DNA of 64,000 bases from Asterias rubens (taxonomy: Eukaryota). Position numbers and translations under genes: made by a program. The notes under the pieces were generated by a model. It was not told the DNA's origin, did no database searches, and worked only from the letters and a program-made list of their open reading frames with translations. Position 1 is the first letter of the stretch; every line of letters starts with the position of its first letter. The DNA lies in NCBI RefSeq assembly GCF_902459465.1, contig NC_047062.1, positions 8,308,001 through 8,372,000 of the forward strand, read 5' to 3'. Below are positions 36,901 through 56,600 of the stretch, one piece after another.

Positions 36901-37701
36901 CTTTTACCGTTGCACCGCAGCTACCTGAAATTTGATATTATTTGCGCATTCCGGGTATCCACGAAGAGCGCACCAAAAGTTACTATTGCCAAAGTAAAGC
37001 AAACATTAAAATGCACACAAAATACTCATTGAGTGCTGATCCTAGGAAGGAACTGTTCAATTATCCCATCAATGCATCAATAAGATCATTATATAATTTA
37101 TTCGCTCCTGACTCTCATTCACTGGTTGTTAATTCCCACGTGACCAGTCTTTGGCGAACCAGAATGCATACTTGTTTTAATGTATGTATTAATGCCTCTT
37201 CATATTGTTATCATTCATCACTGGATAATTAAAAACCATAAATTCTGGTCCAGGCTGGGTTTGAATCACAATGGGCGGAATACCATCTGTCATCATAGGC
37301 CTATATACTCATAATTAATTGCGTGAGGAACGACAACATCAGTGTAGGCTAGGTCTATTTATAGATGTATAGTTGCAGCGCACATAAAAGAAACCAGACA
37401 AAATTGACGTAATGATCTTACTGTTTGAAAATTAATGAACGGTACTTAGCCTGAACGATGCATGAAGGAGCCACCTCGGCTAGACTCTATTCAAGACGGG
37501 GATAGAATGTCAGATTGGCTGTCACTCACAGACGAGTGTAGATAGGGTTATTAATTAAAGGTTTTCTCGGTCAATTTCGGCAAATGAGCAGCCAATTTAA
37601 CCACCAGAATATTCTATCGCGCGAAATCGAATGCTTCTGAAAAGGGTCATTCGATTTCGTTTCATGGTTAGTCAAATGCAATGTTGCGTCATTCGATTTA
37701 A

Positions 37702-38082
37702 AGACAGTGGACACTATTGGTAATTGTCAAAGACCAGTCTTCTCACTTGGTGTTTCTCAACATATACATAAAATAACAAACCTGTGAAAATTTGAGCTCA
37801 ATTATTGGTCGTCGAAGTTGCGAGATAATAAAGAAAAGACAACCTTGTCACACGATTTTGTGTGATTTCAGATGCAAGTTGATTTCGAGACCTCATCTAA
37901 ATTTGAGGTCTCGAAATCAAATTCGTGGAAAATTACTTCTTTCTCGAAAACTACGTTACTTCAGAGGGAGCCGTTTCTCACAGTGTTTTATACCATCAAC
38001 CTCTCCCCATTACTCATCACCAAGAAAGGTTACTTTGATGATAATAATTAGTTTGAGTAATTACCAATAGTGTCCACTGCCT
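37702..38082. mobile_element. MITE family A
   Basis: ttaa|agacagtggacactattggtaatt ... aattaccaatagtgtccactgcct|ttaa. Confidence 0.85.
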
Positions 38083-39741
38083 TTAACAAAATAATCATTC
38101 AATTTATATTCAATTCAATTCAATTCAAGGTATTTTATTCAAATATTTGTAGCCAAAAGCTAAATTACAATTGAATTTACAAGGTAAAAAACATCAAGTT
38201 ACATACATTAAAGGGAAATAAACAAAACGTTATTAAACCAACATAAAATTTAAATAAGAATGAAGGAGATAGGCAACAATTCATCTAAGCAGCACTCAAA
38301 TTCGCAGACGCTTCTTGAGGCGTGTGTGTCACGAAAAAGAATGACGCTATACGCTAAATTGTGCATCTGACAAAGTAATGCAACAAATATGGTGTTTTTT
38401 TCTTGTTTCAACTTAATGATCAATATTGAGCCCTAATTTTTCACAGAATAAGTAAGATCACTTGTCCTAACCCGCCTCCTCATTTTTTAGCCGCTTTCAA
38501 TGATTATGCTTATGCTTAGATTAAATTATTGTTGCTATAGTTACAATGTTCCAATACCGTGTTTCGATCAAACATCGTATACAAACCATGTCATCATGAA
38601 TCTACAGTAGTCCTATACTACGCGGTCTAAAGTCCGATCGTCGCCCGGGAAAGCCATTTTTCTCGCTGCTCTCTCCTCGTCTCCTCTTTCCTCGTCTCCA
38701 GAGTCTCAGTCTCGGATAAAATGGTAACTTAATTCATACTGCAGTATATAAATAAAAGATTGTTGAAGTCAAGCGCCACTGCTGTAAACTGCATTCAGTA
38801 AGAAGTAAATTTTCCTTGTCACTTTATTCAATAAAGCAGTTAAAGATACGGCTGTGGATGTCAATAATAGCCCTAGTTATAGGCTTATTTTGCACATTGT
38901 GGCTGCTGTACCTATAGACTTAATTTAAAATTTAAAAGCCTCATTTCATTTCATTATGACCGAAATGTTTTAGAATGGCTCTGCCTGTTCATTGATCTTA
39001 ATATAGATCCATGGCCCGGCCAACGATTTCGCCAAACTTTTTCTAACTTAGGATTTATCTTAGGATCGACTTATGACGAGTTAAATTCCGTTAAATTAGG
39101 TAACTCCTAACTGGTGCATTAACATCATCAAGCTGTCGTCAAGCCGTCATCTTTGATAAAACTGCATTCAAATACGCGTGGCACATTAGACTGGTCCCCT
39201 GTCATTACCAACAAGGATAATGGCATGTGTTGGCTTTACATGTTTACACGGTACATCGCATTTAACTGCATCGCCAGAACCATCTCGAAGTTCGACGTCA
39301 GATATTCAGGCTCGCAGGCAGACCTTCTTTTTACCTTTATAGCCGAGGGCGCCCTGCTCAAATGACGTCATGATCATGCATGTATAGGATGGAATCGATA
39401 TGTAGGCCTATGTAGAATAGCAATGATATGTTACTCTGATGTGCACGATTTATCCAAGTCCATCACAAAGCGTTGAATATTGGATGGTGTCGGTTCAAGC
39501 CCTTTCTCGCTCTCATAAAAGTGTTCCCACTCTTGAGGAACAACCAAGCCTTTGTATCTGATTCCAGGGTATGTACGACAAATCTGTCGGAAAACCAACA
39601 CAAAACCTTCATGTTAAAATATAAAAACTTACTTACACTGTAGCCATTGAATTGCACCACGTCGGTCTATAAAAGACACTAAATACACAGGGGAGATGCA
39701 GATAAAACAAGTATCCCATGCGTTCCAAAGATACCACTTAA

Positions 39742-40090
39742 AGGGAGGGTACACTAGTAATTGTCCAAGACCAGTCTTCTCACTTGGTGTATCCCATCAT
39801 AAACCATAAAATAACAAGTCTGTGAAAATTTGGGCTCAATCGGTCATCGAAGTTGCGAGAAATGATGGGAAAAAACACCCTTGTTGGACGAACTTGTGTG
39901 CATTCAGATAAGAATAAAAGACTTTATTATTTTAGTGAGAAAATACCTCTTTCTTGAAAACTACGTTACTTCAGAGGGAGCCGTTTCTCACAATGTTTTA
40001 TATTATCAACAGCTCTCCAATGCTCGTTACCAAGTCAGTTTTTAAGTTAATATTTGTTTTGAGTAATTACCAAACGTGTATACCTTCCCT
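39742..40090. mobile_element. MITE family A
   Basis: ttaa|agggagggtacac ... gtgtataccttccct|ttaa. Confidence 0.8.
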
Positions 40091-40402
40091 TTAAAACAAA
40101 ACAATAATTAGTTTTCAAATGAGTTTTGAGAGATCGGGAGTAACTTTCCATATTTATTTGCCTGAGGATCGGGGGAAAAAACGAAAAAAAGCTTATACCA
40201 TGTAATATGAAACCTCAACACTGTCCTGAATATATAAAACAAATTTAACACCTTATGAGTTCCAACTAAATTTTCAGTTCATGTCGGCCATATCACTGGC
40301 AAACATCCTAAAACATTATTTGTACAAAATATTACTCTGGACCTCAACATTGAAAAGATAATACTGAAAACACATTTATTAAATAGCAGTTGAGTATAGG
40401 GC

Positions 40403-43400
40403 CTAAAAAGAGCAAATTGCAGTTACATTTGCAGCAATGACGGGTGCAAGTGTCGCCCGAGGTGAGTATTTAAGGTGCTTGTAAAAGTCTGCCGTCTCCT
40501 GATGCTGACATGCAAGCTGGATGTACCGCACTTTTAGACATCTCCTGGCGTAGTCTTCCAACAATTGGTGCATTTTTTTACCTAGTCCGCTATTCCTTCT
40601 GCTTTTCTTGATCACAACTAAATGCATTCACAAAAATGATTAGTTATAAACTGGTTAGTTATTAAAAACAAAACAAAAAAACATTTCTTTTACTTTTTAT
40701 GGTTTATGATTGGATGATGTTTGCTTTTATGTATTGTACAAAATGTTTTGTTGAATGAACGTCTTGTTTTGAACATTCTCTTACAAGACACTGGACACTA
40801 TTGGTAATTGTCAAAGACCAGTCTTCTCACTTGGTGTATCTCAACATATGCATAAAATAACAAACCTGTGAAAAATTGAGCTCGATTGGTCGTCGGAGCT
40901 GCGAGATAACTATGAAGAAAAAAACCTTGTCACACGAAGTTATGTGCTTTCGAATGATTGATTTTGAGACCTCAAATTCTAAATCTGAAGTCTCGAAATC
41001 AAAGTCGTGGAAAATAACTCGAAAACTACGTCACATTAGAGGAAGCCGTTTCTCACAATGTTTTATAATATCAACATCTCCCCATTCCTCGTTACCAAGT
41101 GAGGTTTTATGCTGATAATTATTTTGAGTAATTACCAATAGTGTCCACTGCCTTCAAAAATGTTTGTTCTTATAACGAATTCTGATATTTTGATGATGTT
41201 AGTTATACCTGATTCAACATAAACTCGGTTTTCGTCTCCGACGACCTCACACACTCTCAAGTGACCGACAACTTCCTTTGTCGTTGTAGCGCCCCCTCGC
41301 GTCTCCACCATTATTAACGAACATGGTAGACCTGTACATTGCGGAGTTTCTAGCAAATGCAACCTGTCCACATGAAAAGACAATAATATCAATTTCGGCA
41401 CGTCAGTCTCGTAATCTAGGGGATGTGCGGTCTGTATAATGAAGCCCTACCCCTAGATGTAGCCCGACCTATAGCCTCAAACTTGCTCTTAAGGTAATAT
41501 AGCCCCGTCCTGTTTTGTTGCACCGAAATTGTACCATTGCCTCCGACCTTAGTGTAGCCTCGAACGTGTACCTCTAATTACTGAAATAGCCCAAAAGTCT
41601 ACCCATCTGCAGCCGTCTAAGAAGCAAATTTGTACCGTAGCCCGACCGAGTGTAGCCTTGACCTAACTTTGAAACGGAACCTCCCGAACTTATGCAGCCT
41701 CAACCTAAATGAAGCCCCAAACTTGTAATAGCCCCAACCATGGTATCCCAAAGTTTGTACCTAAATGTAGCCGCGACCAAGTTGTAGCCATAAATTCCAC
41801 AAACATTGCACGTAGCTAAATTGTACATTAAAATGTAGCCCGACCTAAATGTAGCCCGGGCAATTAATTGACAACCTTTTAAAATGCCGCCACTGATTTT
41901 CTTAAATTGTTTTGAAGTTAAAGTGGAATTCTCTTGGGAAAAAATGCCTTATCACCTGAAATTCTTGTATTCAAAACAAACAAGAGCATGTTTAAATAGG
42001 TACTTCTCAAGACAAACCGTTTGTATGTTCAGTCTAACATTAATTTATTGCAAGTTTGAAGAACGAGCAGATCGCGTTGTTTCCATTGTATTTCAAAACC
42101 AAATACGAGGCAACAACTCGGCATAAATTTTCATTATTGTTATTATTATTATTAAAGCACATTAGCTATCGTTAAACAGTTTGTATCTATAACATTAATT
42201 ATGGGATAACTAACACGGCCAAACTGTCTCATCAAACACGCAACGTTCTGTTTGGATGATGCTGTACATGATCAATCTTGAGCGGTTAAGGGTACTAAAT
42301 TTCTGGGAATTCATATTGATGAAAATTTGACTTGGAAGAAGCATATTGGCACTATAGCAGTTAAAATATCTAGAAATATAGGTATAATGAATGGGCTTAA
42401 AAATTTCCTTCCCTGTAGCATATTACTGACCTTGTACAACTCTTGTATTTTACCTTATCTTTATTACGCAATTTTGACATGGGGAAGTCCAACTCCTAAA
42501 TGTAATAAACTTCTCACTCTTCAGAAACGTGCAGTTCGGGTTATTTCCAAAAGCGGACTATTGTGAGCACTCTGGGCCTCTCTTTTGTAATTTAAAACTG
42601 TTAAAATTCGTTGACCTTTATCATCTTAACTTAGGAAAGTTTATGTATAAATATATGAATAATCTTTTACCTGCTTGTTTCAACTCCAGTTTTACACTTA
42701 CCTCAAACATCCACTCCTATTATACCCGTAGCGCTGCTAGGAAAAATCTGTATGTTAACTATCGTATAGAACCTCGTTGTCTAAAAATGGTGTTGTCCAG
42801 CGTGGCACTTTATTTTGGAATAGTCTGGACGACTCTTTTAAATCATTGCGTACTCTCTCGACTTTTACCAAAAAACTTAAAACTTGTTTTCTTAATGAAT
42901 ACTAAGAATCTGATGTTATTTTTGTATGTAGAAATTGTAACGGCTTTATTTTCTGTCTTACACCTGTCAATTTTGTCCTGTTAGTTTTGTCCTGTATTTT
43001 GAATGTCTGTCTGTTTTTTTGGTTTGTCTGTTCATAGGCTGGGGAACAAAAGCTGTGCTTCTCCCCGGACCTAGATGTTGCCTTTTGTTTATTGTTTCAT
43101 CTTTTAATATATTTTATATTTACTTTTATTTTGTCCATATTACTCTGTATTATACACTATTTGCAACATTGAATAAACGTTTATATCTATCTATCTATCT
43201 ATCTATGTACATCATCTACCAATGTAAACAAAAGACCTGGAGTCCATCCGTCCACTGAGAAAAGACCTTTAGTCCGTCACGTCAGACTAAAAGATTTAAC
43301 ATGGAGACCATGTACGATGAATGTAGATTTCTACCTCCATGAACCAACCAAGTGGCACCTCTCCATTGTATTGTGTTGTACTAACTTGTTTTGTGTTAAA

Positions 43401-44303
43401 ACTTTGAAGGTCCCAGTATTTCTATATGCAATTCACAAAGTAAAGCCGACGGCTTGGTTGACAAACTGGTGAAGACTGGTTGTATATTTTGAGAACAAAA
43501 CCACGATGATACTATAAGTGTTATGTAATTTGACAAGTGCGATTTAGGTTCACTAAAAGACCAACTTCAATGTTACTCTGAATGGGAACACAAATACAGA
43601 AAAGATGAATACTTAGCGGAGAGGTTTTTGAAACATTACAGGGGAAATAGAGCTCACTTATCAAAGTTTTTAACTTGTGCTTTGTTGGTAAAGGGATTGT
43701 CGAATGGAATGGCAAATCCTGTGTGGAATTTAATGTGTTTTCTTTTTAATCGCTCAGCGCCCATCCGGAGCATGTTTCATGGATGGGCGCTATGTAAATG
43801 GGCATTGTTGTTGTTGTTTATTAATTAGAAACAATTTGTGCATGTATATACAGTATCAAGCCAATTTAGGGGGTTGGATGATAAATTAAAATCATACATG
43901 CGACAACTTGACTGACACAGAAGGTCACTTCGTTTCCTGTGGTTGGCTGATATTAGACTCTTATCTACCTTTACAACAGAAACATAATAATAGTATCAAT
44001 ATACATAACCTTGAGGGATCACTAAGTTGAGATATGGCGGACACAATGCTACAACACCCATGTTTGGGTAAGTGTGCGCTTCCTCCATGGTGTGCGTATC
44101 CAAACCAAACAGTATACACTTCTATCACGTCCGCTATACCTCAAACAGGCTTATAGTACCTCGTATCATAAGCTACACATCATGATGTGTCATTTGATGT
44201 CTTACCTCTCCGCTAAACAATTCGGCCATTCCTCTTTCAAAAGGCTTATGGTGTCTTCCACCAAGTCTGGGTTGGCATGTACAGGTTCCAGAGAGAATGC
44301 CAT
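40403..44303 (-). CDS. NAA80: N-alpha-acetyltransferase 80-like (actin N-terminal acetyltransferase, GNAT)
   Basis: Exons 44303-44206, 41363-41209 and 40617-40403 (phases 2 and 1, GT-AG; in-frame TGA upstream of the ATG). They give MAFSLEPVHANPDLVEDTISLLKEEWPNCLAERLHLLE...LPCSLIMV...VVGHLRV...VYVESVVIKKSRRNSGLGKKM...LEDYAR...DFYKHLKY, colinear with human NAA80 LEPVHRRPEL..W..SRLHSL..VVGHARL..VETVVV..RGRGFG..FYTHLGY (from memory). The C-terminus is uncertain (see findings). Confidence 0.85.
40786..41153. mobile_element. MITE family A in NAA80 intron 2
   Basis: agacactggacactattggtaattgtcaaagac ... ttaccaatagtgtccactgcct. Confidence 0.8.
41440..41860. repeat. Degenerate array of gtagccc(gacc) motifs ending in cccggg
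   Basis: More than 10 dispersed gtagcc/atagcc-cgacc motifs in about 420 bp, within NAA80 intron 1. Confidence 0.55.
42240..43205 (+). mobile_element. L2/Crack-type LINE 3' fragment with (ATCT)n tail, antisense in NAA80 intron 1
   Basis: KFLGIHIDENLTWKKHI..ISRNIGIM..LLTLYNS.ILPYL.Y...WG and HSGPLF..LKLLKF.DL..LNLGKFMYK are RT C-terminal motifs, frameshifted. aataaa followed by (tatc)n at 43170-43205. Confidence 0.8.
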
Positions 44304-45744
44304 CGTCTCTCAGTTTCAGTTTCAACTACGGCAAGCAGTTGTGTAGTTTTGGAGCGATGTCTGTTCATGCTCTGTCATTGACTATGTTTCTGTTGCGGAA
44401 ATCTACGGAAGCCGGGTAGTGCCAGGAGATAAGAAGTGAAATACTTTTCATGAGTGCGATAATAATTATTTGTTGTACCATTTATCTAGCGGTCGCCACA
44501 TAATTATCTGGCGGGTGTAAAGGGGAAAAGTTAAATCTCAATACGTTCAAAGCTATAGGTTAAGTATTATACAACTATTCCCTATTAGACATGTATTGGA
44601 AACATTAAAAGCACGTAGGCCTATGATACGAGGCGTTAATATATCAAGTTCTTAGTTAGGGAGGGGGGCAAGGCGATACAGGTGTTGGTTGGGGTGGGGT
44701 TTGGAACTGAGGGAAGGTGCGAGGAAGAGATTTTCGGAAGGCGGAAATAACTCTGGAGCGGGAAATTCGAAACCAAATCCGGTGACAGGGGGGCTGGAGG
44801 GGTTTGAAAAGCCGAAAACATAATTTATCGGTGGTCTCTGGTCCTAAACCATTCCCCGACTGTTTGGTGTGGTTTTGTGGTTTTCCCAAATCAAGGCAAT
44901 GGTTAAAAACAGACCTTTGTAAAGAACGTGTAGTCCAGACCGCTAGATAATTAAGTGGCAGCCGCCAGCAGATTAATGGTACAAAAACAATATTATCGCA
45001 CTTATAAACAAGTCGGTTACTGGTTGGCAGATAATTACCCACGTTCGTCCTGGAGAAAAAAAAACCGCCACACACCGGAATCGAACCAGGGAAGCTAAAC
45101 GAACGCACCCGGGTATAGTCTTGGTTCCAAGACCATTGGTGTTGCGCGGTCACACACAACCAATGGTCCGATCATATCTATGCACGGCAAAAACTGTACA
45201 CGCTTTGTGTTTCAATAGGCTATGCTTCATACTTTAGTTAGTAAACAATGATTTTAGGTGCACAAGATTATAGACACGAGTCACTGATTTAAGCTAACAT
45301 CCGGGAACGTTTAATGCAACACACGAAAGGTCAAAGGTCAATAAACAACTTTATGCATATTGCAACATCCTCCTCTTTTTGAGGAAGGAGCATTTTTGAA
45401 AGCCACAACAATTTAACTCCAACTTGAACACTGGGAAAAACAAGTTATTTTAGACATGCATTAAATCATGTTTTCTCCAAAGAAGAAAAAAAAAACAGAT
45501 GGAAAAAAAAAAAAAATAGAGAAACAATTTGTTTTCTCTAGTCAAACAAAATGAGGGATTTCTCCTAACTTTTTTTTATTTTTTTTTTTGATAAACCAAA
45601 ATACCCTCTTAACTGTGGAAGGCATACATCTGCTTAAAACGCCTTTTTTGGTTTGAACAAAAAAAATTTTTTTTTTAGATATATAAACTCAAGCAACTGT
45701 TGTCAATTTGTGAACAGCATCTTGTTTTGATTTGAACTCAGTTC

Positions 45745-47589
45745 TCAGTATTTAACAAAGTCCTTTAGTCTGCTAGGTTCTTTGATCATTCTACCAGATC
45801 TGGTCTTTGGCAAGTCTTTCAGTTCAATTGTCTCTTGTTGAGGGTTTGGGTCAATTGTTTGATGCATTCCTGGGGGGTGTTCCATTTGAGGGATGCGAGT
45901 GGGTTGTTTCCGTGTGGGTTGTTTCGGTGTTCCAGATCCATCAGATACTTGTGGGTCTGGGTGACTCTGTGGTGGTAGGATGGTTTGCTTTGTAATGCAT
46001 TGGTCAGTGGGGGTCGGGGCATGCAAGTGTCTCATGTTTGTGTGACCATGCATTACTGGTGGTTCTTCACGCGTTTTCTTCAGGTCAACACGATTGCGTC
46101 TCAAGGTCTGTCCTTGTTGGGTTTCGATTTCGTAGGATCTCTCGTCCAGTCTCTTGCTTACAACAGCCCGTGGCCACTGTTTTTCTCCAGAGCGGAATGG
46201 TTTCAGTCGTACAACATCTCCTTCTGCCAGCGATGGCAAGTCTTTTGCATGTTTGTTGTAGTTGTCCGACTGTTTTCTCTGTAGATGTTTCATTTTGGCT
46301 CGCTCACTTTCCATGATGTCTCTTCCTCTTGGTACTAACAGGCTGTTAGATGTGGGTAGAAGGGTTCTGGTTCTTCGGCTATGCAGTCTTTGTGCGGGAC
46401 TGCTGCTGATTCCTTGAGTTGGAGTATTTCTCAGTTCAAGAAGTGCCATGTATGGGTCAGAGTTGGCTTTCTTGCACTTCTTCAGTAGTCTTTTTGCAGC
46501 CTTCACTGCAGACTCCACTTTACCATTAGATTGGCTATGTTTGGGGGAGATAGTGAAATGTTCAAAATCCCAAACTTTGGAAAATTTCTTGAACTCATCG
46601 GACGTGAACTGACCACCATTGTCGCTGATTACCGAGTTTGGTATGCCATATCTTGCAAAGTGAGATTTCAACTTTTTTATGACAGTTTTTGAGGTCAGGT
46701 TGTGGAGTCTGTCTATTTCCCAGAAGTTGGACAAATAGTCAACAGTGATTAGGTAGTCCTTACCATCATACTCTAGAAGATCGGCTCCAATTTTCTCCCA
46801 GGGGCGGTTTGGTAGATCATGAGGCATGAGTGTTTCCTTCTGGTTTTTTGTCTCATATGATCTGCACGCATCACACTTTGATACAAACTGCTTTATCTCA
46901 GCAGACATGCCTGGCCAGAATAGACATTCACGAGCTCTCCTGAGGGAACTTTCAACACCAAGATGAGAGTTGTGAACTGTCTTGATCATTTCTTTCCTGA
47001 GTGAGCTTGGTATTACGATGCGCTCCCCTCGGAACACAAGACCATCCGAAAGGGAGAGTTCGTCACGAACGTTGAAGTAAGGTAGTGTTTGGGATGGAAG
47101 GAAGTCTTTCTCATCGGGCCACCCTTGTTGGATCACCACTTTCAGTAGTTGCAGTGATTCATCTTTGTCCGTTTCTTCTTTTATTTGTCGTAGTCTGTCT
47201 GGTCCCATGCTAAGGCTATCAACCAGGTTGACCTGAGCAAAGTCATCTGATCCATCAGTGTACGGTAGGTAGGATCTGGACAGCATATCTGCAAGATGCA
47301 TTTCCGTGCCTTTCTTCCAGAGAATTTCTATGTCGTAGTTCAACATTCTCATCAGCATGCCTTGGAGACGTCTTGGGGCACGATGAAGTGGTTTCTTGAC
47401 AATTGTCTCGAGCGGTTTATGGTCACTTTCAACTAGAATTTTTTGACCAAAGGTGTACTGGTGGAATCGTTCAAGTGCGAACACGATTGCAAGAGCCTCT
47501 TTCTCAATTTGGGCATATCTCTGTTCAGTTGGGGTCAATGCCCTACTTGCATAAGCAATTGGTTTTCCTTCTTGTAGGATAGCCGCACC
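45745..47589 (-). CDS. Retrotransposon RNase H (C-terminal part) plus integrase
   Basis: GAAILQEGKPIAYASRALTPTEQRYAQIEKEALAI (RNase H) begins at 47589, in frame with ORF 45745..47538. H2C2 (HNSHLG...CDAC) and D-D-E core (GADL, ISDNG, GKVESAV). Confidence 0.9.
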   Translation of the reverse strand, partial: GAAILQEGKPIAYASRALTPTEQRYAQIEKEALAIVFALERFHQYTFGQKILVESDHKPLETIVKKPLHRAPRRLQGMLMRMLNYDIEILWKKGTEMHLADMLSRSYLPYTDGSDDFAQVNLVDSLSMGPDRLRQIKEETDKDESLQLLKVVIQQGWPDEKDFLPSQTLPYFNVRDELSLSDGLVFRGERIVIPSSLRKEMIKTVHNSHLGVESSLRRARECLFWPGMSAEIKQFVSKCDACRSYETKNQKETLMPHDLPNRPWEKIGADLLEYDGKDYLITVDYLSNFWEIDRLHNLTSKTVIKKLKSHFARYGIPNSVISDNGGQFTSDEFKKFSKVWDFEHFTISPKHSQSNGKVESAVKAAKRLLKKCKKANSDPYMALLELRNTPTQGISSSPAQRLHSRRTRTLLPTSNSLLVPRGRDIMESERAKMKHLQRKQSDNYNKHAKDLPSLAEGDVVRLKPFRSGEKQWPRAVVSKRLDERSYEIETQQGQTLRRNRVDLKKTREEPPVMHGHTNMRHLHAPTPTDQCITKQTILPPQSHPDPQVSDGSGTPKQPTRKQPTRIPQMEHPPGMHQTIDPNPQQETIELKDLPKTRSGRMIKEPSRLKDFVKY

Positions 47590-48121
47590 TGAAACATGGT
47601 GGCAGCGGTGAAGTATTCATCATAGAACTCTAAGTTACGTTTTTCTATAATGAAAAACTGAAGAGAACCCGTCCAGGAGAAAAGCAAAAAAGGACAACCG
47701 ATCAGTCCGTGAGCCCATCTATCTACATGCGTCCGTGAACCACCGTTCTGCACTACACTACACTCGTCTGTGGATGTGTACGTCGCCCGTAAGTTGTAGT
47801 TTAAACTCTTAAACCGTGTTGATGTTTAGCAATGTTGATAGTCACCGAAACAAACAAAAGTGACGGGAAAGTGATTGTACTTAAAATAGTAGGAAAACGT
47901 ACAAGAAATATGCAATCTGAATCTCACTGAACTGATGATAAATGCATACCTACTCAGTACTTTCACTCATCATGCTAAAAATAACACACTCTCGACTCGT
48001 GAGAGGACTCACTTCATGAACATTGTGAACTACATCTGTACCGCTCACTGACACCTACGCACCTGACTAGTGCTCGTATCTACGTTGCTGTTTTGGCATA
48101 AAAAAAATATATATATAAAAA

Positions 48122-50154
48122 ATGGCTTGTGCTAAACCCCTCACCCATGTGTCTCCCCCACCTCAACTAAAGCTCAAAGAAAATGCAATCGAAGAGTGGA
48201 AAATGTTTAAACAGATGTACTCCAACTACTGCATTATAACTGAACTGAGCAAACATGACAAGGCATATCAAAAGGCAGTATTCCTTCACTCTATGGGCCC
48301 TGCTGGGGTAAAGATCTTTAATAGCCTGACCTTCTCTGAAGATGATGATAAAGATGATATCACCCTTATCACGCAGAAACTTGATCATTACATCATTGGT
48401 GAAGTAAATGAAACATATGAGCGATATATGTTCAATAAGAGAGACCAAGAAGCATCAGAATCTATAGAGGCTTATCTATCAGCTCTCCGTGAACTTGCCA
48501 AAACATGCAACTTTTGTGATTGTTTACAAGACAGCCTACTTCGTGACCGAATTGTTCTCGGGATCCGTGACTCACACACACGTAAACTGCTGCTACAGAA
48601 ACGCAAACTCACTCTAAAGATGGCTCTTGATATCTGCAGGTCAGCTGAAGCAACCACATTTCAGCTGAAATCCTTTGGTGAAACCGAAACTGAGGCTGTC
48701 CACAAAGTTAGTGACTGGAAAACTAAGGATACAACAGCTAAACACACAGGGAAACTCCCCACCATCACATGCAAATTCTGTGCTCGCAAACATCTGAGAA
48801 AAAAAGAACTCTGTCCTGCATGGGGAAAAACCTGTAGCTTATGCAAACGAGACAACCACTTCAAGCAATGCTGCAAGTTCAACAAAGAGACACGCAAAGT
48901 TCACGCACTAGATGACGCCCATGTGTATGGCTCTAATGAATCATTAGACTCTAGTGGCACTGAATCCATCAACTGTGTAGAGATTGCTGTCAATGCTGTA
49001 GAAAACACCAAAGGTGCTCTCTTTGCTGAAATGATGCTTGATGGCAAATCAATGAAGTTTCAAATAGACTCAGGAGCTACCGTCAATGTTTTGCCAAGGA
49101 AATATGTGACTGAATCCACAATTCAACCACACAACCTCACACTTAAGATGTACAACCAGTCCACGCTAAAAGCTGTTGGCAAGACAAAAGTCATCTTGCG
49201 CAACCCCCAAAATAAGAAGAAATACAGGGTTGAATTTGTGGTGATTGAACCAAACTCCTTCACTCCCCTCCTTAGCCGCAATGCTGCTGAACGCATGTCA
49301 CTGATCACGGTCAACTATGACAACTTCAGACTACTGCACTCAGTAAACGTCACATCCACTGAAGGCATTCTTGCAGAATATGATGATGTATTCAAAGGCA
49401 AACTTCCAGGCTCTCTACCAGGATTAGTCCACCTCCACATTGCAGAAGACGCAAGACCAGTGCAATGCTCACCTAAGAAAGTACCAGTGTCACTAAAACA
49501 CAAAGTCAAGACAGGACTAGCACAACTGGTTAAAGATGACATTCTTGCACCAGTTGATGAACCTACTGAATGGTGTAGTCGCATGGCAGTGACAGCAAAG
49601 AAAACCTCAAATGATCTACGATACTGTATCGATCCCCGTCCACTGAACAAAGTACTACAAAGAGAGTTGTACGAATTGCCCGTTATGGAAGACATCTTAC
49701 CAGAACTTTCCAGAGCTAAAATTTTCTCTAAACTGGACCTCCGATCTGGATATCTACATTGTGTGCTTGATGACCAAAGTAGTCTGCTCACTACCATGAT
49801 GACACCGTTTGGCAGATACAGATGGAAAAGACTCCCATTTGGTCTGAAAGTCAGCTCTGAAATATTTCAGAAACGCCTCCACCAAGCGATTGCTGACCTT
49901 GACGGCATTGAATGCGTTGCCGATGACATCATTGTTTTTGGTGTTGGCGATACAACCGATGAGGCAGAACAGAGCCACAATGCAAGGCTAAAACAACTCC
50001 TCCAGAGATGCAGAGAAAAAGGCATCAAACTCAATGGAGAAAAATCTGAGATCAAATCTCAAAGCATCACCTTCCTAGGACACGTTGTCACCAGTGAAGG
50101 TCTAAAAATTGATGCAAAAAAGGTTGAAGCCATCACCAAAATGAGTAATCCCAC
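48122..50154 (+). CDS. Retrotransposon gag-protease-RT (inverted segment, truncated after KMSNPT)
   Basis: CCHC-type knuckles (CKFCARKH...C, CSLCKRDNH...C), protease FQIDSGAT, RT motifs CIDPRPLN, FSKLDLRSGY, WKRLPFG, ADDII. The ORF runs into the reverse-complemented PBS and LTR and stops at 50176. Confidence 0.92.
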
Positions 50155-50644
50155 CGCTGCCACCATGTTTCAATAGGCTATGCTTCATACTTTAGTTAGT
50201 AAACAATGATTTTAGGTGCACAAGATTATAGACACGAGTCACTGATTTAAGCTAACATCCGGGAACGTTTAATGCAACACACGAAAGGTCAAAGGTCAAT
50301 AAACAACTTTATGCATATTGCAACACTTTGTATGACCGAACGCTAACGGGCGCTCAGTTTCCCTCAGTGTGTGACCGCGCAACACCAATGGTCTTGGAAC
50401 CAAGACTAAACCGGGTACCACTGTAAGCACATACCGCGACAACAAGGTGTCAACATCACCGGAGTTAAATTGTCCGCCTCCTGGTATTTTCATTTTTAGA
50501 AGACGAGTAACAATTTTAAAATTATAGGTGCTTTTTCAACAGCTGCGTTACTTTTTTTGCTGTCTTTATAATTATCTGCACATAGTTTATTCGCACGCAC
50601 GTGGTTTTGGCAGTAGCCATCTAGGTCCATATATACACGGGACG

Positions 50645-53600
50645 ATGGAGTCCAATTTAAGTTCAGAATCCGTTATTACGTGGCTACATTTTGTCACAGC
50701 CGGGACGGCGGTCATCATTGGGTAAGTATGACGATGACTAATTATAAAATTATTATTTTGCTCGGACAGGTTTCTGCGCGAATATTTGATTTCAAATCAA
50801 AGTTCAATGTTGGTGCAATAATTGAATAAAACTCATAGTACGTAAGTATAGTATAGCATAGCAGCTAGCATTCAGTCATTTCAAGAATACATGACAATAC
50901 AAAAATACATCCAGATGATGGGCTAGGACTTTTAGGAGAAACAAAAGCAAAATAATTACTGTGGTCCATAGATCTTCCTCCCCACAACTGGTTGTAAAAC
51001 AAGTAAAAACGAGTAATAAAATATGTATGTTTTTTGTAGGCCTATTAATAAATAAAAAAAGTATAAAACAATGTACAATACAAAAAGATAGGAAATTTAA
51101 GTTAATTTAATATATATTATAACAATCAATAAATCAATTAACAATCATGATAAAATTTCAGAAAACTCGTTGTGTGATGGCAGCTGGATTTTTAGCAAAG
51201 CAGGGGGAAAAGTTTCCGTATGGCACCACCACTTTTTCATTCGATATGAAATTATTGTATCTAATTTAACTTCATTGAGATATCCCTTTTGGCTTTTTGT
51301 AAGAATGAGTGAAAAAGTGGTGGCACCATTTGGAAAGTTGATAATGAATGCTACTATGGTTACACACCTATATTCCGACACCCCTATGTTCCGACACCCC
51401 AATGTTCAGACAACTCCGCCCATATTCCGACATCCCTATGTTCCGACACCACTGTATTCCGACACCCCTGTATTCCGAAACCCCTATATTCCGACACCCC
51501 TATGTTCGGACAACTGAACCTATATTCCGACACCCCTATGTTCGGACAAGTTATTTTCGCACAAGTTATTTTCGCACAAGTTATTTTCGCTCAATATTAC
51601 TCTGTTGAACAATAACAAAAACACAACTTGTATTACAGGTTTCCCGGTGAATTTCGGCCGGGAATAGGCCTAAGTTTGGACATTCGTAAGTTGAATTTGT
51701 ACTATTTTTTTTTTTAAAGGCAGTGGATACTAATGGTAATTACTCAAAATAATTATTAGCATAAAACCTTACTTGGTGACGAGTAATGGGGAGAGATTGA
51801 TGGTATAAAACTATGTGAGAAACGGCTCTCTCTGAAAGGCCATAGTTTTTGAGAAAGAAGTAATTTTCCACGAATTTGATTTTGAGACCTCATATTTAGA
51901 ATTTGAGGTCTCGAAATCAACCATCTAAATGCACACAACTTCGTGTGACAAGGGTGTTTGTTCTTTCATTATTATCTCGCAACTTCGACGACCGATTGAG
52001 CTCAAATTTTCACAGGTTTGTTATTTTATGCACATGTTGAGATATACCAAATGAGAAGACTGGTCTTTGACAATTACCAATATTGTCCACTGTCTTTAAG
52101 TGAAGGAATCAAATAATAGATAATCGAATCACACTTGAATTTGTTGCTTGTTTAGGCAACAAAACACACAAAATGTTGTTGTTTTTTGTACACTGAGTAC
52201 CATTTTTTTCTCTAACTATTGCAGGTACTTGGTGTGGACTTACACTTTCTTCATTAGAAATGGAATTCCTGGACCACTGTCCATGCCATTAGTCACAACC
52301 ATCAAAAGATCACGAGAGGTAGGACAGTGGCTTCAATATTTTCTAAGATACCGTCGCAGCAACAATTGGCTTGTCTTAAAATGCTCATGAGCGGTCTCCA
52401 AACGGCTGCTAGATTTGACCAACTTCTGTTATTCACACCAAACTAGTATACAAATATTGACTGCTTCAAGTGCTATGGTTAAAACTATGACTCCCTCAGT
52501 GATCCCCGGAGTGTTCTATTTTCCCAAGGCGAAACTATGACTCCCGTGGTGATCCCCGGAGCGTTCTATATCAGTGGCGAAGCCGAGGGTAAATAGAACG
52601 CTCCAGGGATCACCAAGGGAGTAATAGTTTTAACCATTGCACGAGTAAAAGCAGTCAATACTTGTTTTACAACACCCCAAACATTTCTAAATACTGTACT
52701 ATTTTTTACATACCTGAATGATACAATCCACGGACGACGCGAATACAGATTGCGAAAACTTTTACTGTGCTCTGCATGTAGTGTCGTGTAGTCCGAAATG
52801 GTTACAGACTATTAATTTATCATCCTCGTACACGCACAGACGTTTGGGTACTGCACGCCGTGTGATAGTCTTCAGCAAACCGATGCACTATCACACAGCA
52901 AACCGATGCACTATCACACGGCCGTCGTCTAGTAAAGTTAAGACTTATCATGTGACGCGCTCTAAACCAATGAAAAGGCAGAATATTGGTAAGGGGTGTT
53001 ATAATCATAATTATTCCCCTTTAATATCCCGTATTGAAAAATAGTGTCATAATTTAATTGAACCCCAATCCATTGCACCCACATTAACTTAAATGTTGGT
53101 TTTATACTAGATCATGAACCAGGCCTGATAGTTCACGGAGGCAACGAATGATCCAGTCTTCCTCATCATAGGGTGCTCTTTATCAAGGAGAAAATGCATT
53201 GGGGCCTTGTCCTTTCAAAAACAAAGCATATATAGGCCTGATGAGCGTCAACATTGACTAGCACCATAAAGTACAAATACTTTGGTAGGTGCTCAGCTTT
53301 ATGCTTTGAATAATGTTGGTTTCATGCGTGTACCAGCTACCTTAAAATGGTATATGCGTGCACTTGTCAAGAAACACAAAAACTATTTCACAAAGAAAAC
53401 AGTTGATTTGAAGCCTCGGAGCACAATAAGCACATTGTCCCTACCAATATCCTTGTTGATATTATTATATAATAATATCCTTGTTTAGTATAGGGGCCAT
53501 TTATCCGCTAGTGGATGAGCCGATCTTTATATCACATGTTAATACACCCCCCACGTGACCAGTCTTCGACCAATCAGAGTGGTATAATTTCTCTGAGGTA

Positions 53601-56600
53601 TTCTTTTCATGTTCTTGTAACACATCTTAGATGAAACATAGTAATCCATGTTTTTGTTTTTTTCTTCTTTTAGGCAAGCTACCGCTGCGATGAAAAGTGG
53701 ATACGGAAGTATGGTAAAGTTGTGGGGTAAGGTGGCATTTGGTCTTGGCCAGCCTTGTGTCTTGGTCTTGGTCTTGGTAATGGGGAACCTTGGCCCAAAT
53801 GACTCTGTTTATTGTTCGCAAAGAAGTTCGCTGAAAAATCAAAGCTTTTAAGCTAAAAGTCAAGCATGTACTTCACAGGTTGTCTGGGACTTTTCCCGGC
53901 ACAGGTGCATGTACTTCTTTTATGCTAAGCATTCTTTCTTTGCTTAGCTAGTCTTGTAATTCAGCGTTAACCCTGGAAGGTGAAGAAAGGTGACCGTTTG
54001 TCATAAGAAGAATCATGAATGAGGCCAAGATGTGATGATGACCACTTCTTTAGAAGCAATTTTTATTTGTTAACAAGTCGAGTGTTTTCTTTTAAATAAT
54101 TTCAACATTTTGTTAACATTTTTTTTTAGGTACCAAATTAAAGAGATATTATCTTAACGCTGTCTCAGACTCTGGCTTCAGTTATGACTGCGGCTGTTGC
54201 TAAGGGTGTTGCTAAGGTCGGACCCTATTGGTAGTTACTCAAAATAATCATTAGCATAAAATCTTGCTTAGTAAAGAGTAATGGGGAGAGATTGATAGTT
54301 AGTATAAAACATTGTGAGAAACGGCTCCCTCTGAAGTAATGTAGTTTAAAGAAACAAGTAATTTTCTACGAATTTGATTTTGAGGCCTCAGAATTAGATT
54401 TTGAGGCCTGGAAATCAAGCACCTGAAAGCACAGAACTTCAGGTGACAAGGGTGTTCTTTCTTTCATTATTATCTCACAACTTCGACGACCAATGGAGGT
54501 TTGCTATTTTATGTATAATGTGGTTAAGAGCATCAAATTCAAGTTCTGGTGCAGTCACCGGAGTGTTAGTCCGAATCCCGGTCATGACACTTGTGTCCTT
54601 GAGCAAGATACTTCACTATAATTGCTTCTCTTCATCCAGCGGTTTTAATGGGTACCTGCGAGGGTAGAGGTTGATATTTTGTATGAAAAAGCCACAAGTG
54701 CCTTACAGGCAGCTCAGGGCTGTATACTCCTAAGGGAGCGGAGAAACTTTAAAGGGATGTTATTGGCCCTATGACCAGGGCACTAATGTAAAGCGCATTG
54801 ATTTGGTTATTGTGAAATGCGCTATAATATAAGAACTTGTTATTATTATTATTATTATAATGTTGAGATACAGTTACCAATATTGTCCAGTGTCTTTAAT
54901 ACTTGAGTGCATAATGATGTGGTTATGTAGCCCTACCCATAATATTCTGCAAATTTGAACAAGGCCTAACTGTCAATTGTTTTCCTGTTTACTCTGTTTA
55001 AAGGTTTATTGTTTCCCTGATTACTCTGTTTGAAGGTTTATCAGTGCGTTTGGACCTACCCTCCTCATATCAGATCTGAAGATCCTAAGACAGATACTTG
55101 GCCCGGATTTCAAGAACTTCCACAATCGGCCGGTAAGTTTATCAAAATGTTCAATGTCTAGTCAGTTATTTGCTCTGCAGGGTGTCTAAAAAAAAAAGTT
55201 TGCTGGGATCTCTCTCACATCGCTCAAGAAGCCACTCACTATCTGTCTTCTTGCAAGATCAGCAGGCAGACGTTCATGACGAATGTGGATGTGGAATGGA
55301 TGGAAATAAAGGTACAGACAAGTGATGGGGTTAAAAGTTCCGTCTTGCACTTGTCTCTCGTGGGTGGTCAATCAGTTGCTCTTGTACGGCAGCAATGTTT
55401 TCCTGAGATCTCGCTGTCCTTGGCCTTCCTAAACTTCTTTTGTTGCAGTTGAGGCTGGTTCCGTGTGCTTCATACTTTCTCACATTGGCCCAGATTGTTT
55501 TCTTTACTAGTGGTTCTCAGTCTGGGAATGCTTCTCCAAAGGCCTCCCGTGTAGCCTGCAAACTTCGTTGAACCATTGTGACAACCTGAGGTTTACACAC
55601 TGTCTGAAGGCAAGAATGACTAGGACTATCTTGGTGAAATCGAACCCAGGTCATATATTTTGTCATTGATGATGAAATCCATCCATTGTTTTTGCACACA
55701 GATTGGAGGTATCTCTCAGAGTAAACGACTACACAGTATGCTGATCACACTGAGAGACGAAAAATGGAAGAACATGCGAAGTGTTATCTCACCTGCCTTC
55801 ACATCCTCCAAAATCAGAAAGGTGAATCTCAAGCTACATACAGGCCTCCAAGGAAAGCAAAATAACATACACTGGTGCATAGCTTGAATAGTTTACATGC
55901 ACCTCCAAACAGTTACATGTACTCTTTCAGTGAAACACCTCTTTAATAAGGACAGTACCGTGTTTGAAGTGTGTACACACAAACATAAAAATGTCTCACA
56001 GATAGTGCGTGCCCTTTGGCAGTCAACCCAATGTTTTTCCTCCGTTTAATGTGCTGTTTTTACATAATATCAGTGTTTTATACTCTCTATGTTTCTTCGA
56101 TTTTTAGCAGCAATCTGTGTATATAAATATGTGTACCTTTTCAACGTCTTTTGAACCACACCAAGACTATTTTATCACATTTGAACAAGAGGCACCAGAC
56201 TTTCTAGTGTACTAAACAATCCTGTCTGGTACCTTGCCCACAGTTTTTTTGTTAGAACCTGAGTGATGATAGTAGTGTGCATGTACACCATTGTAATAGA
56301 ACCAGGAGAATGCTGAGTGCGTGTGATTTCGTGAGACCATTTTTTTGGTCATTCATTTGACGCCATGAACAATGACCAATGAAGGCATGTAGAAATGGTC
56401 TATGTGCGATGCCATTTTACCAAACACAATACAATAATACAATACAATCAAACTTTATTGTCCCTGTAAGGGAAATTCCTTTGGCCTTATTGCTCACATA
56501 CAAATACAGTCACCAGTAAAAAGGTACACGCGTGTCATGCAATGATCATTTTGGCATACAACTGTATCGCATGGTATCGATACGCTGCGTCCACAGAGAG

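What the first reader, a model, noticed from the sequence alone, without database searches (positions are those of the whole stretch)
45208..50325. Young Gypsy element with an inverted PBS-gag-pro-RT half, yet perfect LTRs and TSD
Seen: the LTRs are identical and flanked by CTTTG, so this is one insertion. LTRs, PPT and RNaseH-integrase are on the minus strand, but 47590-50151 (7 nt of LTR end, PBS, leader, gag, protease, RT) is on the plus strand. The 21-mer TGAAACATGGTGGCAGCGGTG is present as an inverted repeat at both breakpoints (47590-47610 and 50152-50172). The pol region between KMSNPT and GAAILQ is absent (roughly 80 codons by analogy to related elements). Both ORF halves are otherwise intact. 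Inference: a rearranged cDNA that kept correct ends and was integrated normally, dead on arrival. If transcribed from its 5' LTR it would make antisense gag/RT RNA, a potential self-silencing (piRNA/siRNA) source.
Basis: partly seen in the sequence, partly recalled or inferred. Interest (0 to 1): 0.85.

Follow-up and report, generated by a model that had tools for sequence, protein, structure and literature searches.

The report
Starfish retrotransposon with reverse-transcription inversion scar
A young Ty3/gypsy retrotransposon copy in the starfish Asterias rubens has its front half flipped and 246 bases missing, and the breakpoints suggest the error arose while the element was being copied from RNA into DNA, before it inserted normally; it is a dead one-off copy, informative about mechanism but not a new kind of element.

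Summary
The LTRs are identical over 160 nt, the TSD is a perfect 5-bp CTTTG, and 47590-50151 (U5 stub, PBS, leader, gag-pro-RT) lies on the opposite strand to the LTRs, PPT and RNaseH-IN. A unique 21-nt inverted repeat sits at both breakpoints. The window is Asterias rubens LR699092.1. Four intact copies at 98-99.6% identity, two from the same genome, are colinear. They show that exactly 246 nt (82 codons, including the RNase H DAS aspartate) are missing.

New evidence comes from junction 1. The sequence beside the 5' LTR (50148-50165) is a perfect 18-nt complement of the tRNA-Leu(AAG/TAG) 3' end. The family's own PBS matches only 14 nt in every normal copy. The extra four bases are native pol bases. 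The pol site AATCCAACC is the only site in the element within one mismatch of tRNA-Leu nt 58-66.

The best reading is that plus-strand strong-stop DNA, ending in its tRNA-copied tail, misprimed on sense RNA in pol and copied back to the RNA 5' end. The growing minus strand then switched onto that strand's 3' end, and the product integrated normally.

The assembly could not be checked against reads, and the antisense-silencing idea is untested. This is a known kind of defect: inversions and tRNA-marked aberrant strand transfers occur in HIV proviruses.

The parts
45109..45157 (.). Left arm of a 49-nt host-site palindrome; the element sits in its loop. This is context, not part of the element.
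   Evidence: Inverted repeat I1, 96% complementary to 50367-50415. It is unique in the window, and the empty site folds as a long hairpin.
45203..45207 (.). Target-site duplication CTTTG, left copy
   Evidence: Read directly. Family copies L005 and L006 also have 5-bp TSDs.
45208..45367 (-). 3' LTR in element sense, 160 nt, TG...CA
   Evidence: 100% identical to 50166-50325. Aligns to the LTRs of intact copies on the minus strand.
45368..45380 (-). Polypurine tract AAAAAGAGGAGGA, directly upstream of the 3' LTR
   Evidence: identical in intact copy L005.
45745..47589 (-). N-terminally truncated RNase H plus integrase reading frame (614 codons plus stop), starting at GAAILQ
   Evidence: ORF list. 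Pfam RT_RNaseH from profile position 19 and Integrase_H2C2, plus a sub-threshold rve hit. Colinear with L003 3148-5128 at 98.7%.
47589..47590 (.). Junction 2: the antisense U5 stub is joined to pol at GGTGCGG, with no microhomology
   Evidence: Intact copies read AAAACAGGTCTC|GGTGCGGCTATCC, while the window reads ...CCATGTTTCA|GGTGCGGCTATCC in element sense.
47590..47596 (+). Last 7 nt of the LTR (U5 stub, TGAAACA), in inverted orientation
47597..47614 (+). Genomic-type PBS: 14 nt complementary to the tRNA-Leu 3' end, followed by AAGT, which does not follow the tRNA
   Evidence: Identical in normal copies L002, L003, L005, L006 and L007. tRNA sequence from PMC10591036.
47615..48121 (+). Leader (5' UTR), inverted relative to the LTRs
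   Evidence: Colinear with L003 from 333 onward at 99.65%.
48122..50151 (+). gag (CCHC knuckles), protease and RT coding sequence of native origin. The ORF then runs on through PBS-derived bases to a stop at 50174-50176.
   Evidence: 684-aa ORF. Complete RVT_1 and a weak, sub-threshold gag-asp_proteas hit. 99.5-99.65% identical to intact copies up to 50151-50155.
50147..50155 (.). Junction 1 zone. AATCC is shared by pol and tRNA-Leu nt 58-62. The C at 50152 is of tRNA/PBS type where pol has A. ACC is again shared.
   Evidence: All intact copies read AATCCAACC. 50152 is a private difference of the window copy, and complete divergence starts at 50156.
50148..50165 (-). Perfect 18-nt PBS (TGGTGGCAGCGGTGGGAT) complementary to the tRNA-Leu(AAG/TAG) 3' end, abutting the 5' LTR
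   Evidence: The 18-mer ATCCCACCGCTGCCACCA is the 3' tRF of tRNA-Leu AAG/TAG. The same 18-mer is in snail small RNAs. Sequence read.
50166..50325 (-). 5' LTR in element sense
50326..50330 (.). Target-site duplication CTTTG, right copy
50367..50415 (.). Right arm of the host-site palindrome (context)

Best explanation
This is one normally integrated copy of a recently active Ty3/gypsy family of Asterias rubens. Its cDNA was mis-assembled inside the particle during reverse transcription. Steps 3, 4 and 5 are inferred; the rest is shown by sequence.

1. tRNA-Leu primed minus-strand synthesis. After the first jump, the minus strand copied U3, PPT, IN and RNase H.
2. The PPT primed plus-strand strong-stop DNA (+sssDNA), made of LTR plus an 18-nt copy of the tRNA 3' end. 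In this family the last 4 nt of that copy (GGAT) do not match the element's own PBS flank (AAGT), so the 3' end is frayed on its proper acceptor.
3. Instead of transferring to the minus-strand PBS, the +sssDNA 3' end annealed to still-uncopied sense RNA at the pol site ATCCAACC. Four terminal base pairs are perfect and 7 of 8 pair overall. It was then extended as a second antisense strand through RT, protease, gag, leader and PBS, and 7 nt into U5, where the template ended or was left. The likely reason is that this was the RNase H-trimmed 5' end of the RNA.
4. The real minus strand had its tip 246 nt downstream, at the GAAILQ codons. It switched end-to-end, without homology, onto the 3' end of that strand. 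Each strand then completed itself on the other.
5. The product had two full LTRs and correct termini. Integrase inserted it with the family's usual 5-bp duplication.

The result is 5'LTR-PBS18-[antisense RT...gag, leader, PBS14, U5 stub]-RNaseH(truncated)-IN-PPT-3'LTR. It is non-autonomous from birth.
For: - One integration event: identical LTRs and a perfect 5-bp TSD. Family copies L005 and L006 also make 5-bp TSDs.
- Colinear parents exist: L003, L005, L006 and L007 are 97.9-99.65% identical. Both window halves align to them end to end, leaving exactly 246 nt absent.
- Youth: the window copy has only 4 private substitutions outside the junction.
- Junction 1: the 18 nt next to the 5' LTR equal the complement of the tRNA-Leu AAG/TAG 3' 18-mer, which is conserved as far as a mollusc. 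All five normal copies have a 14-nt PBS followed by AAGT.
- Site selection: the acceptor site is the only position in the 5.1-kb element within one mismatch of AATCCCACC. Among 8-mer sites with a perfect ATCC, it is the only one upstream of the minus-strand tip. A random break would land there roughly 1 time in 5000.
- Mismatch position: the window carries the primer-type C where every intact copy has A.
- Inverted PBS: the PBS inside the inverted segment is the genomic type (AAGT), as expected if it was copied from RNA.
- Known principles: plus-strand synthesis stops at m1A58, after 18 nt of tRNA, and tRNA-marked aberrant second-strand transfers occur in HIV proviruses (PMC12657518). tRNA-copied PBS bases can be inherited (PMC7472051). 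Inversions make up about 6% of defective HIV proviruses (PMC6235535).
Against: - No raw reads or independent assembly confirm the two junctions or the orientation. The junction-spanning ORF is on record only in GCA_902459465.3.
- The four bases ATCC at junction 1 are identical in pol and tRNA. It cannot be shown that they were physically templated by the tRNA; the argument rests on site selection.
- The A. rubens tRNA-Leu gene itself was not seen. Its 3' end is inferred from mammal and snail data and from the family PBS.
- Junction 2 has no microhomology. The 7-nt U5 stub has only a plausible explanation, not a demonstrated one.
- Flipping the segment between the 21-nt repeats gives a colinear deletion-plus-filler element with the same junction sequences. 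The inverted order therefore depends on the assembly being right.
Confidence: 0.68

Rival explanations
1. Reverse transcription produced a colinear element with the 246-nt pol deletion replaced by a 21-nt filler. In this case the minus strand briefly copied the tRNA-primer/minus-DNA junction and then re-annealed at ATCC. The 2.56-kb segment between the resulting 21-nt inverted repeats was flipped later, either by recombination in the genome or by mis-orientation in the assembly.
For: Flipping 47590-50172 leaves both junction sequences unchanged and gives a colinear order (reasoned). The junction 1 microhomology argument applies equally.
Against: This needs three events instead of two. It also needs an unusual intermediate, with the minus strand starting to copy 7 nt inside another minus strand's 5' end. 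In the assembled order the partner with the tRNA-copied 3' end is simply the normal +sssDNA. A 21-bp repeat is short for recombination in an element with no LTR divergence. Any read longer than 21 nt fixes the orientation, and from my own knowledge, not checked here, the assembly is long-read based.
Confidence: 0.1
2. A normal colinear copy inserted here and was rearranged afterwards in the chromosome. Candidate routes are staggered double-strand breaks with fill-in, or replication-fork template switching (MMBIR/FoSTeS). Either would give an inversion with a 21-nt inverted duplication at one breakpoint and a 246-nt loss at the other.
For: Inverted duplications at inversion breakpoints are a known outcome of staggered breaks (established knowledge, not tested here). 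LTR identity and the TSD would be preserved.
Against: It gives no reason for one breakpoint to straddle the U5/PBS boundary. It also gives no reason for the other to fall on the single site in the element that extends the tRNA match from 14 to 18-19 nt. By chance that is about 1 in 256 to 1 in 5000, depending on how it is counted. The time window is short, with 0 LTR differences and 4 private substitutions.
Confidence: 0.08
3. Assembly artefact: a chimeric consensus of reads from several near-identical family copies, or a chimeric long read, created an inversion that does not exist.
For: The family has several copies at 98-99.6% identity in the same genome. No independent assembly holds the junction ORF.
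Against: Both junction sequences are new. They are absent from all colinear copies examined, so collapsing normal copies cannot create them. Library chimeras give palindromic fold-backs at random positions. They do not give a non-palindromic inversion with a 246-nt loss whose breakpoints sit at the PBS and at a tRNA-complementary site. The flanks, TSD and LTRs are perfectly consistent.
Confidence: 0.06
4. Two separate copies in opposite orientation, either nested or adjacent, were reduced by deletions to the present structure. Alternatively, the structure is an autointegration product.
For: Opposite-strand halves could in principle come from two insertions.
Against: There is a single TSD pair and one pair of identical LTRs. 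The inverted half keeps only 7 nt of LTR, and that stub is continuous with the PBS. No second TSD and no LTR tip is joined to internal DNA, which autointegration would require. The two halves are exactly complementary apart from 246 nt.
Confidence: 0.03

Closest known systems
Inversion-class defective HIV-1 proviruses (FLIPS and IPSA surveys)
   Same: An integrated provirus with normal ends but an internal segment in reverse orientation, often with an accompanying deletion, attributed to errors of reverse transcription. These make up about 6% of defective proviruses in one survey and 1-3% in another.
   Different: Here the element is an endogenous Ty3/gypsy retrotransposon in an echinoderm germline. 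The junctions can be read against near-identical intact copies. One junction carries the signature of the tRNA-copied end of +sssDNA. The papers I read do not give a mechanism for HIV inversions.
Aberrant second-strand (plus-strand) transfer with tRNA(Lys3) sequence at the deletion junction in HIV-1 (PMC12657518)
   Same: The 5' LTR-PBS is followed by tRNA-templated bases and then an ectopic internal sequence. This is interpreted as +sssDNA failing to transfer to its proper PBS acceptor. Non-complementarity of the 3' end is named as the cause of deficient transfer.
   Different: In HIV the tRNA is read beyond m1A58 (7-54 extra nt) and the strand lands on minus-strand DNA, giving a colinear deletion. 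Here copying stopped at the normal 18 nt. The mismatch arises because the family PBS is only 14 nt. The strand landed on a sense-polarity template, giving an inversion.
Complex LTR retrotransposons made by template switching (Sabot and Schulman 2007, PMC1950507; rice 'abnormal' elements, bioRxiv 10.1101/452573)
   Same: Structurally abnormal LTR elements that still carry a single TSD, and so were made before integration.
   Different: Judging from Sabot and Schulman's abstract and the rice preprint, those cases involve shared or extra LTRs (the abstract describes elements sharing an LTR). The rice preprint has no mention of inversions.
Ty1 plus-strand strong-stop transfer with a short PBS (Lauermann and Boeke 1997; own knowledge, paper not held)
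   Same: The PBS is shorter than the tRNA stretch that RT can copy, so +sssDNA molecules extended into the tRNA have a non-complementary 3' tail and transfer poorly.
   Different: That is experimental work on normal transfer in yeast. No inversion product with this signature is known to me from it.
Maize Mu killer, an inverted partial duplicate of a transposon that silences its family (own knowledge)
   Same: A rearranged copy whose transcript contains antisense sequence of the active element.
   Different: Silencing is demonstrated for Mu killer. Here nothing beyond the layout is known, and the element is an LTR retrotransposon in an animal.

Membership tests
Ty3/gypsy (Metaviridae-like) LTR retrotransposon | Direct LTRs with TG...CA termini, flanked by a short target-site duplication | tested here: met
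   160-nt identical LTRs running TGTTGC...AAACA, with a 5-bp TSD CTTTG. Copies L005 and L006 also have 5-bp TSDs.
Ty3/gypsy (Metaviridae-like) LTR retrotransposon | tRNA-complementary PBS next to the 5' LTR and a polypurine tract next to the 3' LTR | tested here: met
   PBS complementary to the tRNA-Leu AAG/TAG 3' end: 14 nt in normal copies, 18 nt here. PPT AAAAAGAGGAGGA.
Ty3/gypsy (Metaviridae-like) LTR retrotransposon | pol domain order protease-RT-RNase H-integrase on one strand | tested here: not met
   This order is met in the family: intact polyproteins P0122, P0241 and P0250 carry RVT_1, RT_RNaseH_2, RT_RNaseH, Integrase_H2C2 and rve in order. It is not met in this copy, where PR-RT is on + and RH-IN is on -. 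The copy is therefore a rearranged derivative of a member, not a functional member.
cDNA rearranged during reverse transcription (inversion-class defective provirus) | Complete LTR termini and a single TSD enclosing the whole rearranged unit | tested here: met
cDNA rearranged during reverse transcription (inversion-class defective provirus) | Colinear, near-identical source copies exist, and the rearranged copy differs only at the junctions | tested here: met
   Four copies at 97.9-99.65% identity, with 246 nt absent and 4 private substitutions elsewhere.
cDNA rearranged during reverse transcription (inversion-class defective provirus) | Breakpoints at replication landmarks, showing use of a replication intermediate | tested here: met
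   Junction 1 lies at the unique site complementary to the tRNA-templated 3' end of +sssDNA. The other end of the inverted block is the PBS plus a 7-nt U5 stub.
cDNA rearranged during reverse transcription (inversion-class defective provirus) | The structure is physically present in the organism's DNA (read or PCR support) | not testable with these tools
   Only the one assembly holds the junction ORF. No read data are accessible.
Autointegration (intramolecular integration) product | LTR tips joined to an internal target, with a TSD-sized duplication at the internal site | tested here: not met
   Internal junctions involve a 7-nt LTR stub continuous with the PBS and a PBS-pol join. There is no LTR tip and no 5-bp internal duplication.
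Antisense or hairpin silencing locus (Mu killer-like, or a piRNA source) | Transcription of the antisense segment, and small RNAs derived from it | not testable with these tools
   Only the layout is known. The NCBI model XP_033634841.1 spans junction 2 on the minus strand, but its support was not seen.

The most novel reading that the evidence does not exclude
The copy is not just debris. Transcription from its intact 5' LTR gives an RNA with 2.56 kb of antisense leader-gag-protease-RT fused to sense RNaseH-IN. That RNA pairs with mRNAs of the still-active family (intact copies at 98-99.6% identity in the same genome) and seeds siRNA/piRNA silencing, making this a naturally arisen 'killer' allele of an animal LTR retrotransposon. 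A second, milder novel reading is that +sssDNA mispriming on sense RNA is a general route to the inversion class of defective proviruses, and is favoured whenever the PBS is shorter than the 18 nt copied from the tRNA.
Probability: 0.1. Interest if true: 0.65.

Novelty: new member of a known kind. Interest (0 to 1): 0.4.

Why it matters
Defective proviruses and retrotransposons with internal inversions are counted routinely, for example in HIV reservoir surveys, but how they arise is rarely readable from sequence. This copy is young enough, and has close enough intact relatives, for both junctions to be read base by base. They suggest a concrete, testable route. The tRNA-copied 3' tail of plus-strand strong-stop DNA does not match this family's short PBS, and it primes on sense RNA at the best complementary site. 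If that holds generally, it predicts where inversions should start: at sites complementary to tRNA nt 59-66. It also predicts which elements should be prone to them: those with a PBS shorter than 18 nt. For the starfish genome itself this is one dead insertion in an intergenic palindrome, next to P450 and acetyltransferase genes. It has no demonstrated effect.

Tried and rejected
1. My first idea was that 'NPT' of KMSNPT was tRNA-derived rather than pol. The colinear relatives rejected it: KMSNPT is native. The idea was refined to a microhomology and site-selection argument.
2. The first protein search found nothing above 63% identity. Intact family proteins (about 1300-1380 aa) fall outside the length window of a 684-aa query. 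The family was reached through a metagenome contig and then its 811-aa ORF.
3. Viral-contig scans with the RT peptide and with the 21-mer found nothing.
4. I looked for a tRNA-Leu gene to confirm the 3' end with a tool. ARAGORN found none in the window or in loci L004-L006. A viral contig with the 22-mer holds only a 5'-truncated tRNA-like stretch that ARAGORN does not call. The identification therefore rests on the literature.
5. I found no microhomology at junction 2 in either polarity. The GGTG shared by the PBS and the RNase H site gives the wrong product if used.
6. Autointegration and nested-copy models were rejected on junction anatomy.
7. Segment-wise similarity hints at different closest relatives for the two halves: the gag-RT half is closest to L003 and the RH-IN half is closest to L005. 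That would suggest two parental RNAs, but there are too few copies and a variable 3' UTR, so I drew no conclusion.
8. An Rfam scan of 44000-51500 gave only a sub-threshold mir-2024 hit in the flanking palindrome.
9. The Lauermann and Boeke 1997 paper is not held. The rice 'abnormal LTR' preprint does not mention inversions.


Full report
**1. Observation**

- The LTRs at 45208-45367 and 50166-50325 are 160/160 identical, begin TG and end CA, and are flanked by CTTTG at 45203-45207 and 50326-50330.
- The 21-mer TGAAACATGGTGGCAGCGGTG occurs only at 47590-47610 (+) and 50152-50172 (-), even with three mismatches allowed. Shuffles of the window give none.
- A 684-aa ORF at 48122-50176 (+) carries a weak, sub-threshold gag-asp_proteas (aspartyl protease) hit and a complete RVT_1 domain.
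- The open frame 47589-45748 (-) has 614 codons. It carries an N-terminally truncated RT_RNaseH (from profile position 19 of 105), Integrase_H2C2 and a sub-threshold rve hit.
- The polypurine tract AAAAAGAGGAGGA abuts the LTR at 45367 on the minus strand.

So the LTRs, PPT and RH-IN are minus-sense, and the U5 stub, PBS, leader and gag-pro-RT are plus-sense.

**2. What and where it is**

The 684-aa ORF is on record as P0244. It sits only on LR699092.1 of the Asterias rubens assembly GCA_902459465.3, at about 8.35 Mb, between an acetyltransferase-domain gene and a P450 gene. The RH-IN half is NCBI model XP_033634841.1.

A metagenome contig (L001, 86-89% nt identity) led to the family's intact polyproteins and to their DNA:

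| Copy | Source | Identity to window |
|---|---|---|
| L003 | ENA ERZ1764460 | 98.7-99.65% |
| L007 | ENA ERZ23498486 | 99.2-99.6% |
| L005 | A. rubens LR699097.1 | 99.0-99.5% |
| L006 | A. rubens LR699104.1 | 97.9-98.9% |
| L002 | more distant relative | 82-85% |

All are colinear: LTR-PBS-leader-gag-PR-RT-RH-IN-PPT-LTR. L005 and L006 have 5-bp TSDs, ACTTT and CTACC. The family is therefore a recently active Ty3/gypsy-type element, and the layout in the window is an exception.

**3. Junction anatomy against the intact copies**

- The plus-strand block aligns to L003 333-2901 and the minus-strand block to L003 3148-5128.
- Exactly 246 nt (82 codons) are absent. They encode NPVEVQRLQGS...TIQCDASKTGL, that is the RT thumb/connection and the RNase H DAS aspartate.
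- At junction 2, intact copies read AAAACAGGTCTC|GGTGCGGCTATCC. The window, in element sense, reads ...CACCGCTGCCACCATGTTTCA|GGTGCGGCTATCC. There is no shared base at the join.
- At junction 1, all intact copies read AAA ATG AGT AAT CCA ACC AAC CCC. The window reads AAA ATG AGT AAT CCC ACC GCT GCC ACC A, followed by the LTR.
- Apart from that zone, the window copy has two private substitutions in the 2562 nt of the plus-strand block (47590-50151) and two in the RH-IN half.

**4. The tRNA signature**

The 18-mer ATCCCACCGCTGCCACCA is the 3' end (with CCA) of tRNA-Leu AAG/TAG (PMC10591036). The identical 18-mer is found among snail small RNAs (PMC7328434).
- Window 50148-50165 is this 18-mer exactly, and 50147 also matches A58. 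So the PBS abutting the 5' LTR is a perfect 18-nt complement.
- Every normal copy, and the PBS inside the inverted block (47597-47614), matches only 14 nt and then reads AAGT instead of GGAT.
- The extra four bases (ATCC) are native pol bases.
- The point is that the pol acceptor site AATCCAACC matches tRNA nt 58-66 (AAUCCCACC) at 8 of 9 positions. It is the only place in the 5.1-kb element within one mismatch of that 9-mer.
- Of the three sense-strand 8-mers with a perfect ATCC (2894, 3462, 4753), only this one lies upstream of position 3148.
- At the single mismatch, the window has the tRNA/PBS-type C where pol has A.
- The element's own PBS flank (ACTT in this orientation) shares nothing with the pol bases at the join.

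A random breakpoint would coincide with such a site a few times in ten thousand. Plus-strand synthesis is known to stop at m1A58, after copying 18 nt of primer (PMC12657518).

**5. Mechanism**

*Shown by sequence:* a single integration; colinear parents; a 246-nt loss; one end of the inverted block joined to an LTR-PBS18 unit, with pairing possible only for a tRNA-templated tail; the other end consisting of a genomic-type PBS plus 7 nt of U5.

*Inferred:*
1. +sssDNA (LTR plus 18 nt of tRNA copy) could not be extended on its proper acceptor, because its last 4 nt mismatch the family's PBS flank.
2. It annealed to uncopied sense RNA at ATCCAACC and was extended to the RNA 5' end, which RNase H had probably trimmed to a 7-nt U5 stub.
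3. The bona fide minus strand had reached the GAAILQ codons. There it stalled or ran off a broken template and switched, without homology, onto the 3' end of that strand. Mutual extension then produced a duplex with two LTRs.
4. Integrase inserted it normally.

This needs two aberrant events and only normal replication intermediates. It also explains why the 21-nt inverted repeat has the limits it has: 7 nt from the stub, and 14 nt over which the tRNA and the genomic PBS agree. All five normal copies keep AAGT. That suggests the tRNA-copied tail is normally not inherited in this family, which fits a tail that is a liability in normal transfer (principle from PMC7472051; Ty1 work from my own knowledge).

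**6. Rivals**

- *(a) Colinear deletion-plus-filler product, flipped later.* This would be followed by flipping between the 21-nt repeats, in vivo or in the assembly. It gives the same junction sequences. It needs three events and an odd intermediate.
- *(b) Post-integration rearrangement.* This could be staggered breaks or fork switching. It keeps the LTRs and TSD, but it leaves the PBS/U5 location and the tRNA complementarity as coincidences.
- *(c) Assembly chimera.* The junction sequences are absent from all normal copies, so collapse cannot make them, and the breakpoints are biologically specific. No reads were available to settle this, and no second assembly holds the junction ORF.
- *(d) Nested copies or autointegration.* These are excluded by the single TSD, the 7-nt stub continuous with the PBS, and the absence of LTR-tip junctions.

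**7. Comparison with what is known**

- Inversions are a recognised class of defective HIV-1 proviruses: 6% in one survey (PMC6235535) and 1-3% in another (PMC9278108).
- tRNA(Lys3)-marked aberrant second-strand transfers give colinear deletions in HIV (PMC12657518).
- Pre-integration template switching gives complex plant LTR elements (PMC1950507).

The present case belongs to this class. It differs in host (echinoderm germline) and element type (Ty3/gypsy). It also differs in that the tRNA copy has the normal 18-nt length, and that the strand landed on a sense template, giving an inversion. I did not find this route described, but my literature search was limited.

**8. Consequences**

The copy is non-autonomous from birth.
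- RNase H lacks its first catalytic motif.
- The RT thumb is gone.
- gag-pro-RT is antisense to the LTR promoter.
- The leader, and so any packaging signal, is inverted.

An LTR-driven transcript would necessarily contain 2.56 kb antisense to the family's gag-pro-RT. Whether it is made, and whether it feeds small-RNA silencing, is untested. The NCBI gene model on the minus strand splices from an ATG in the antisense leader (47970) to an acceptor, TTTCAG|G, created exactly by junction 2. I reconstructed this. I could not see whether RNA evidence supports that model.

**9. Verdict**

This is a new example of a known kind of defect and is of moderate interest. It is useful mainly as an unusually legible record of an aberrant plus-strand transfer.

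Noticed in passing
window 45109-45157 and 50367-50415: The element is inserted in the loop of a 49-nt, 96% complementary palindrome that is unique in the window. The reconstructed empty site folds into one long hairpin (-121.5 kcal/mol over 277 nt). Rfam gives only a sub-threshold mir-2024 hit at 45115-45181 (24.8 bits against a gathering score of 69).
   Followed up: partly
window 47589-47970, minus strand: NCBI model XP_033634841.1 (P0245, 617 aa, starting MSES-AAILQEG) starts at an ATG in the antisense leader (47970). It uses a 372-nt intron whose acceptor, TTTCAG|G, is formed exactly by junction 2. If RNA evidence supports this, it would show minus-strand transcription across the junction.
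   Followed up: partly
window 45070-45097, minus strand: A motif resembling a tRNA T-arm (GGTTCGATTCCGGTGTGTGG) lies just left of the palindrome. It may be a tRNA-derived SINE remnant. ARAGORN calls no tRNA anywhere in the window.
   Followed up: no
window 12735-13125, 16906-17054, 20546-20641, 21683-22070, 23178-23565, 25192-25589, 27076-28328, 33611-33946, 37690-38089, 39745-40106, 40774-41161, 51700-52108, 54211-54902: A dense set of short interspersed repeats (about 150-400 nt, 75-95% identity) in both orientations, sharing cores such as TTGGTAATTACTCAAAA and GTGAGAAACGGCTCCCTCTGAAG. They look like SINE or MITE families.
   Followed up: no
window 3769-4241 and 51346-51564: Tandem arrays: 21-nt and 12-nt periods at 3769-4241 (GACCCAGAATCT units, possibly coding repeats) and a 16-20-nt period at 51346-51564.
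   Followed up: no
L005 7416-7539: The intact A. rubens copy on LR699097.1 has a 3' LTR of only about 124 nt, an internal deletion relative to the 160-nt LTR. Its 1348-aa polyprotein ORF and 5-bp TSD are intact.
   Followed up: no
L003, L007, L001 (ENA/GenBank metagenome contigs): Near-identical copies of this starfish retrotransposon (98.7-99.6% for L003 and L007) turn up in assemblies labelled as metagenomes (ERZ1764460, ERZ23498486, JACSEG01). Presumably they are host or environmental starfish DNA in those samples.
   Followed up: no
window 45208-45367 / 50166-50325, position -11 from the LTR 3' end in element sense: Both window LTRs read AGCCTATTGAAACA where L003, L005, L006 and L007 read AGCATATTGAAACA. 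This is a shared private LTR substitution, as expected if both U5 copies come from one RNA 5' end.
   Followed up: partly
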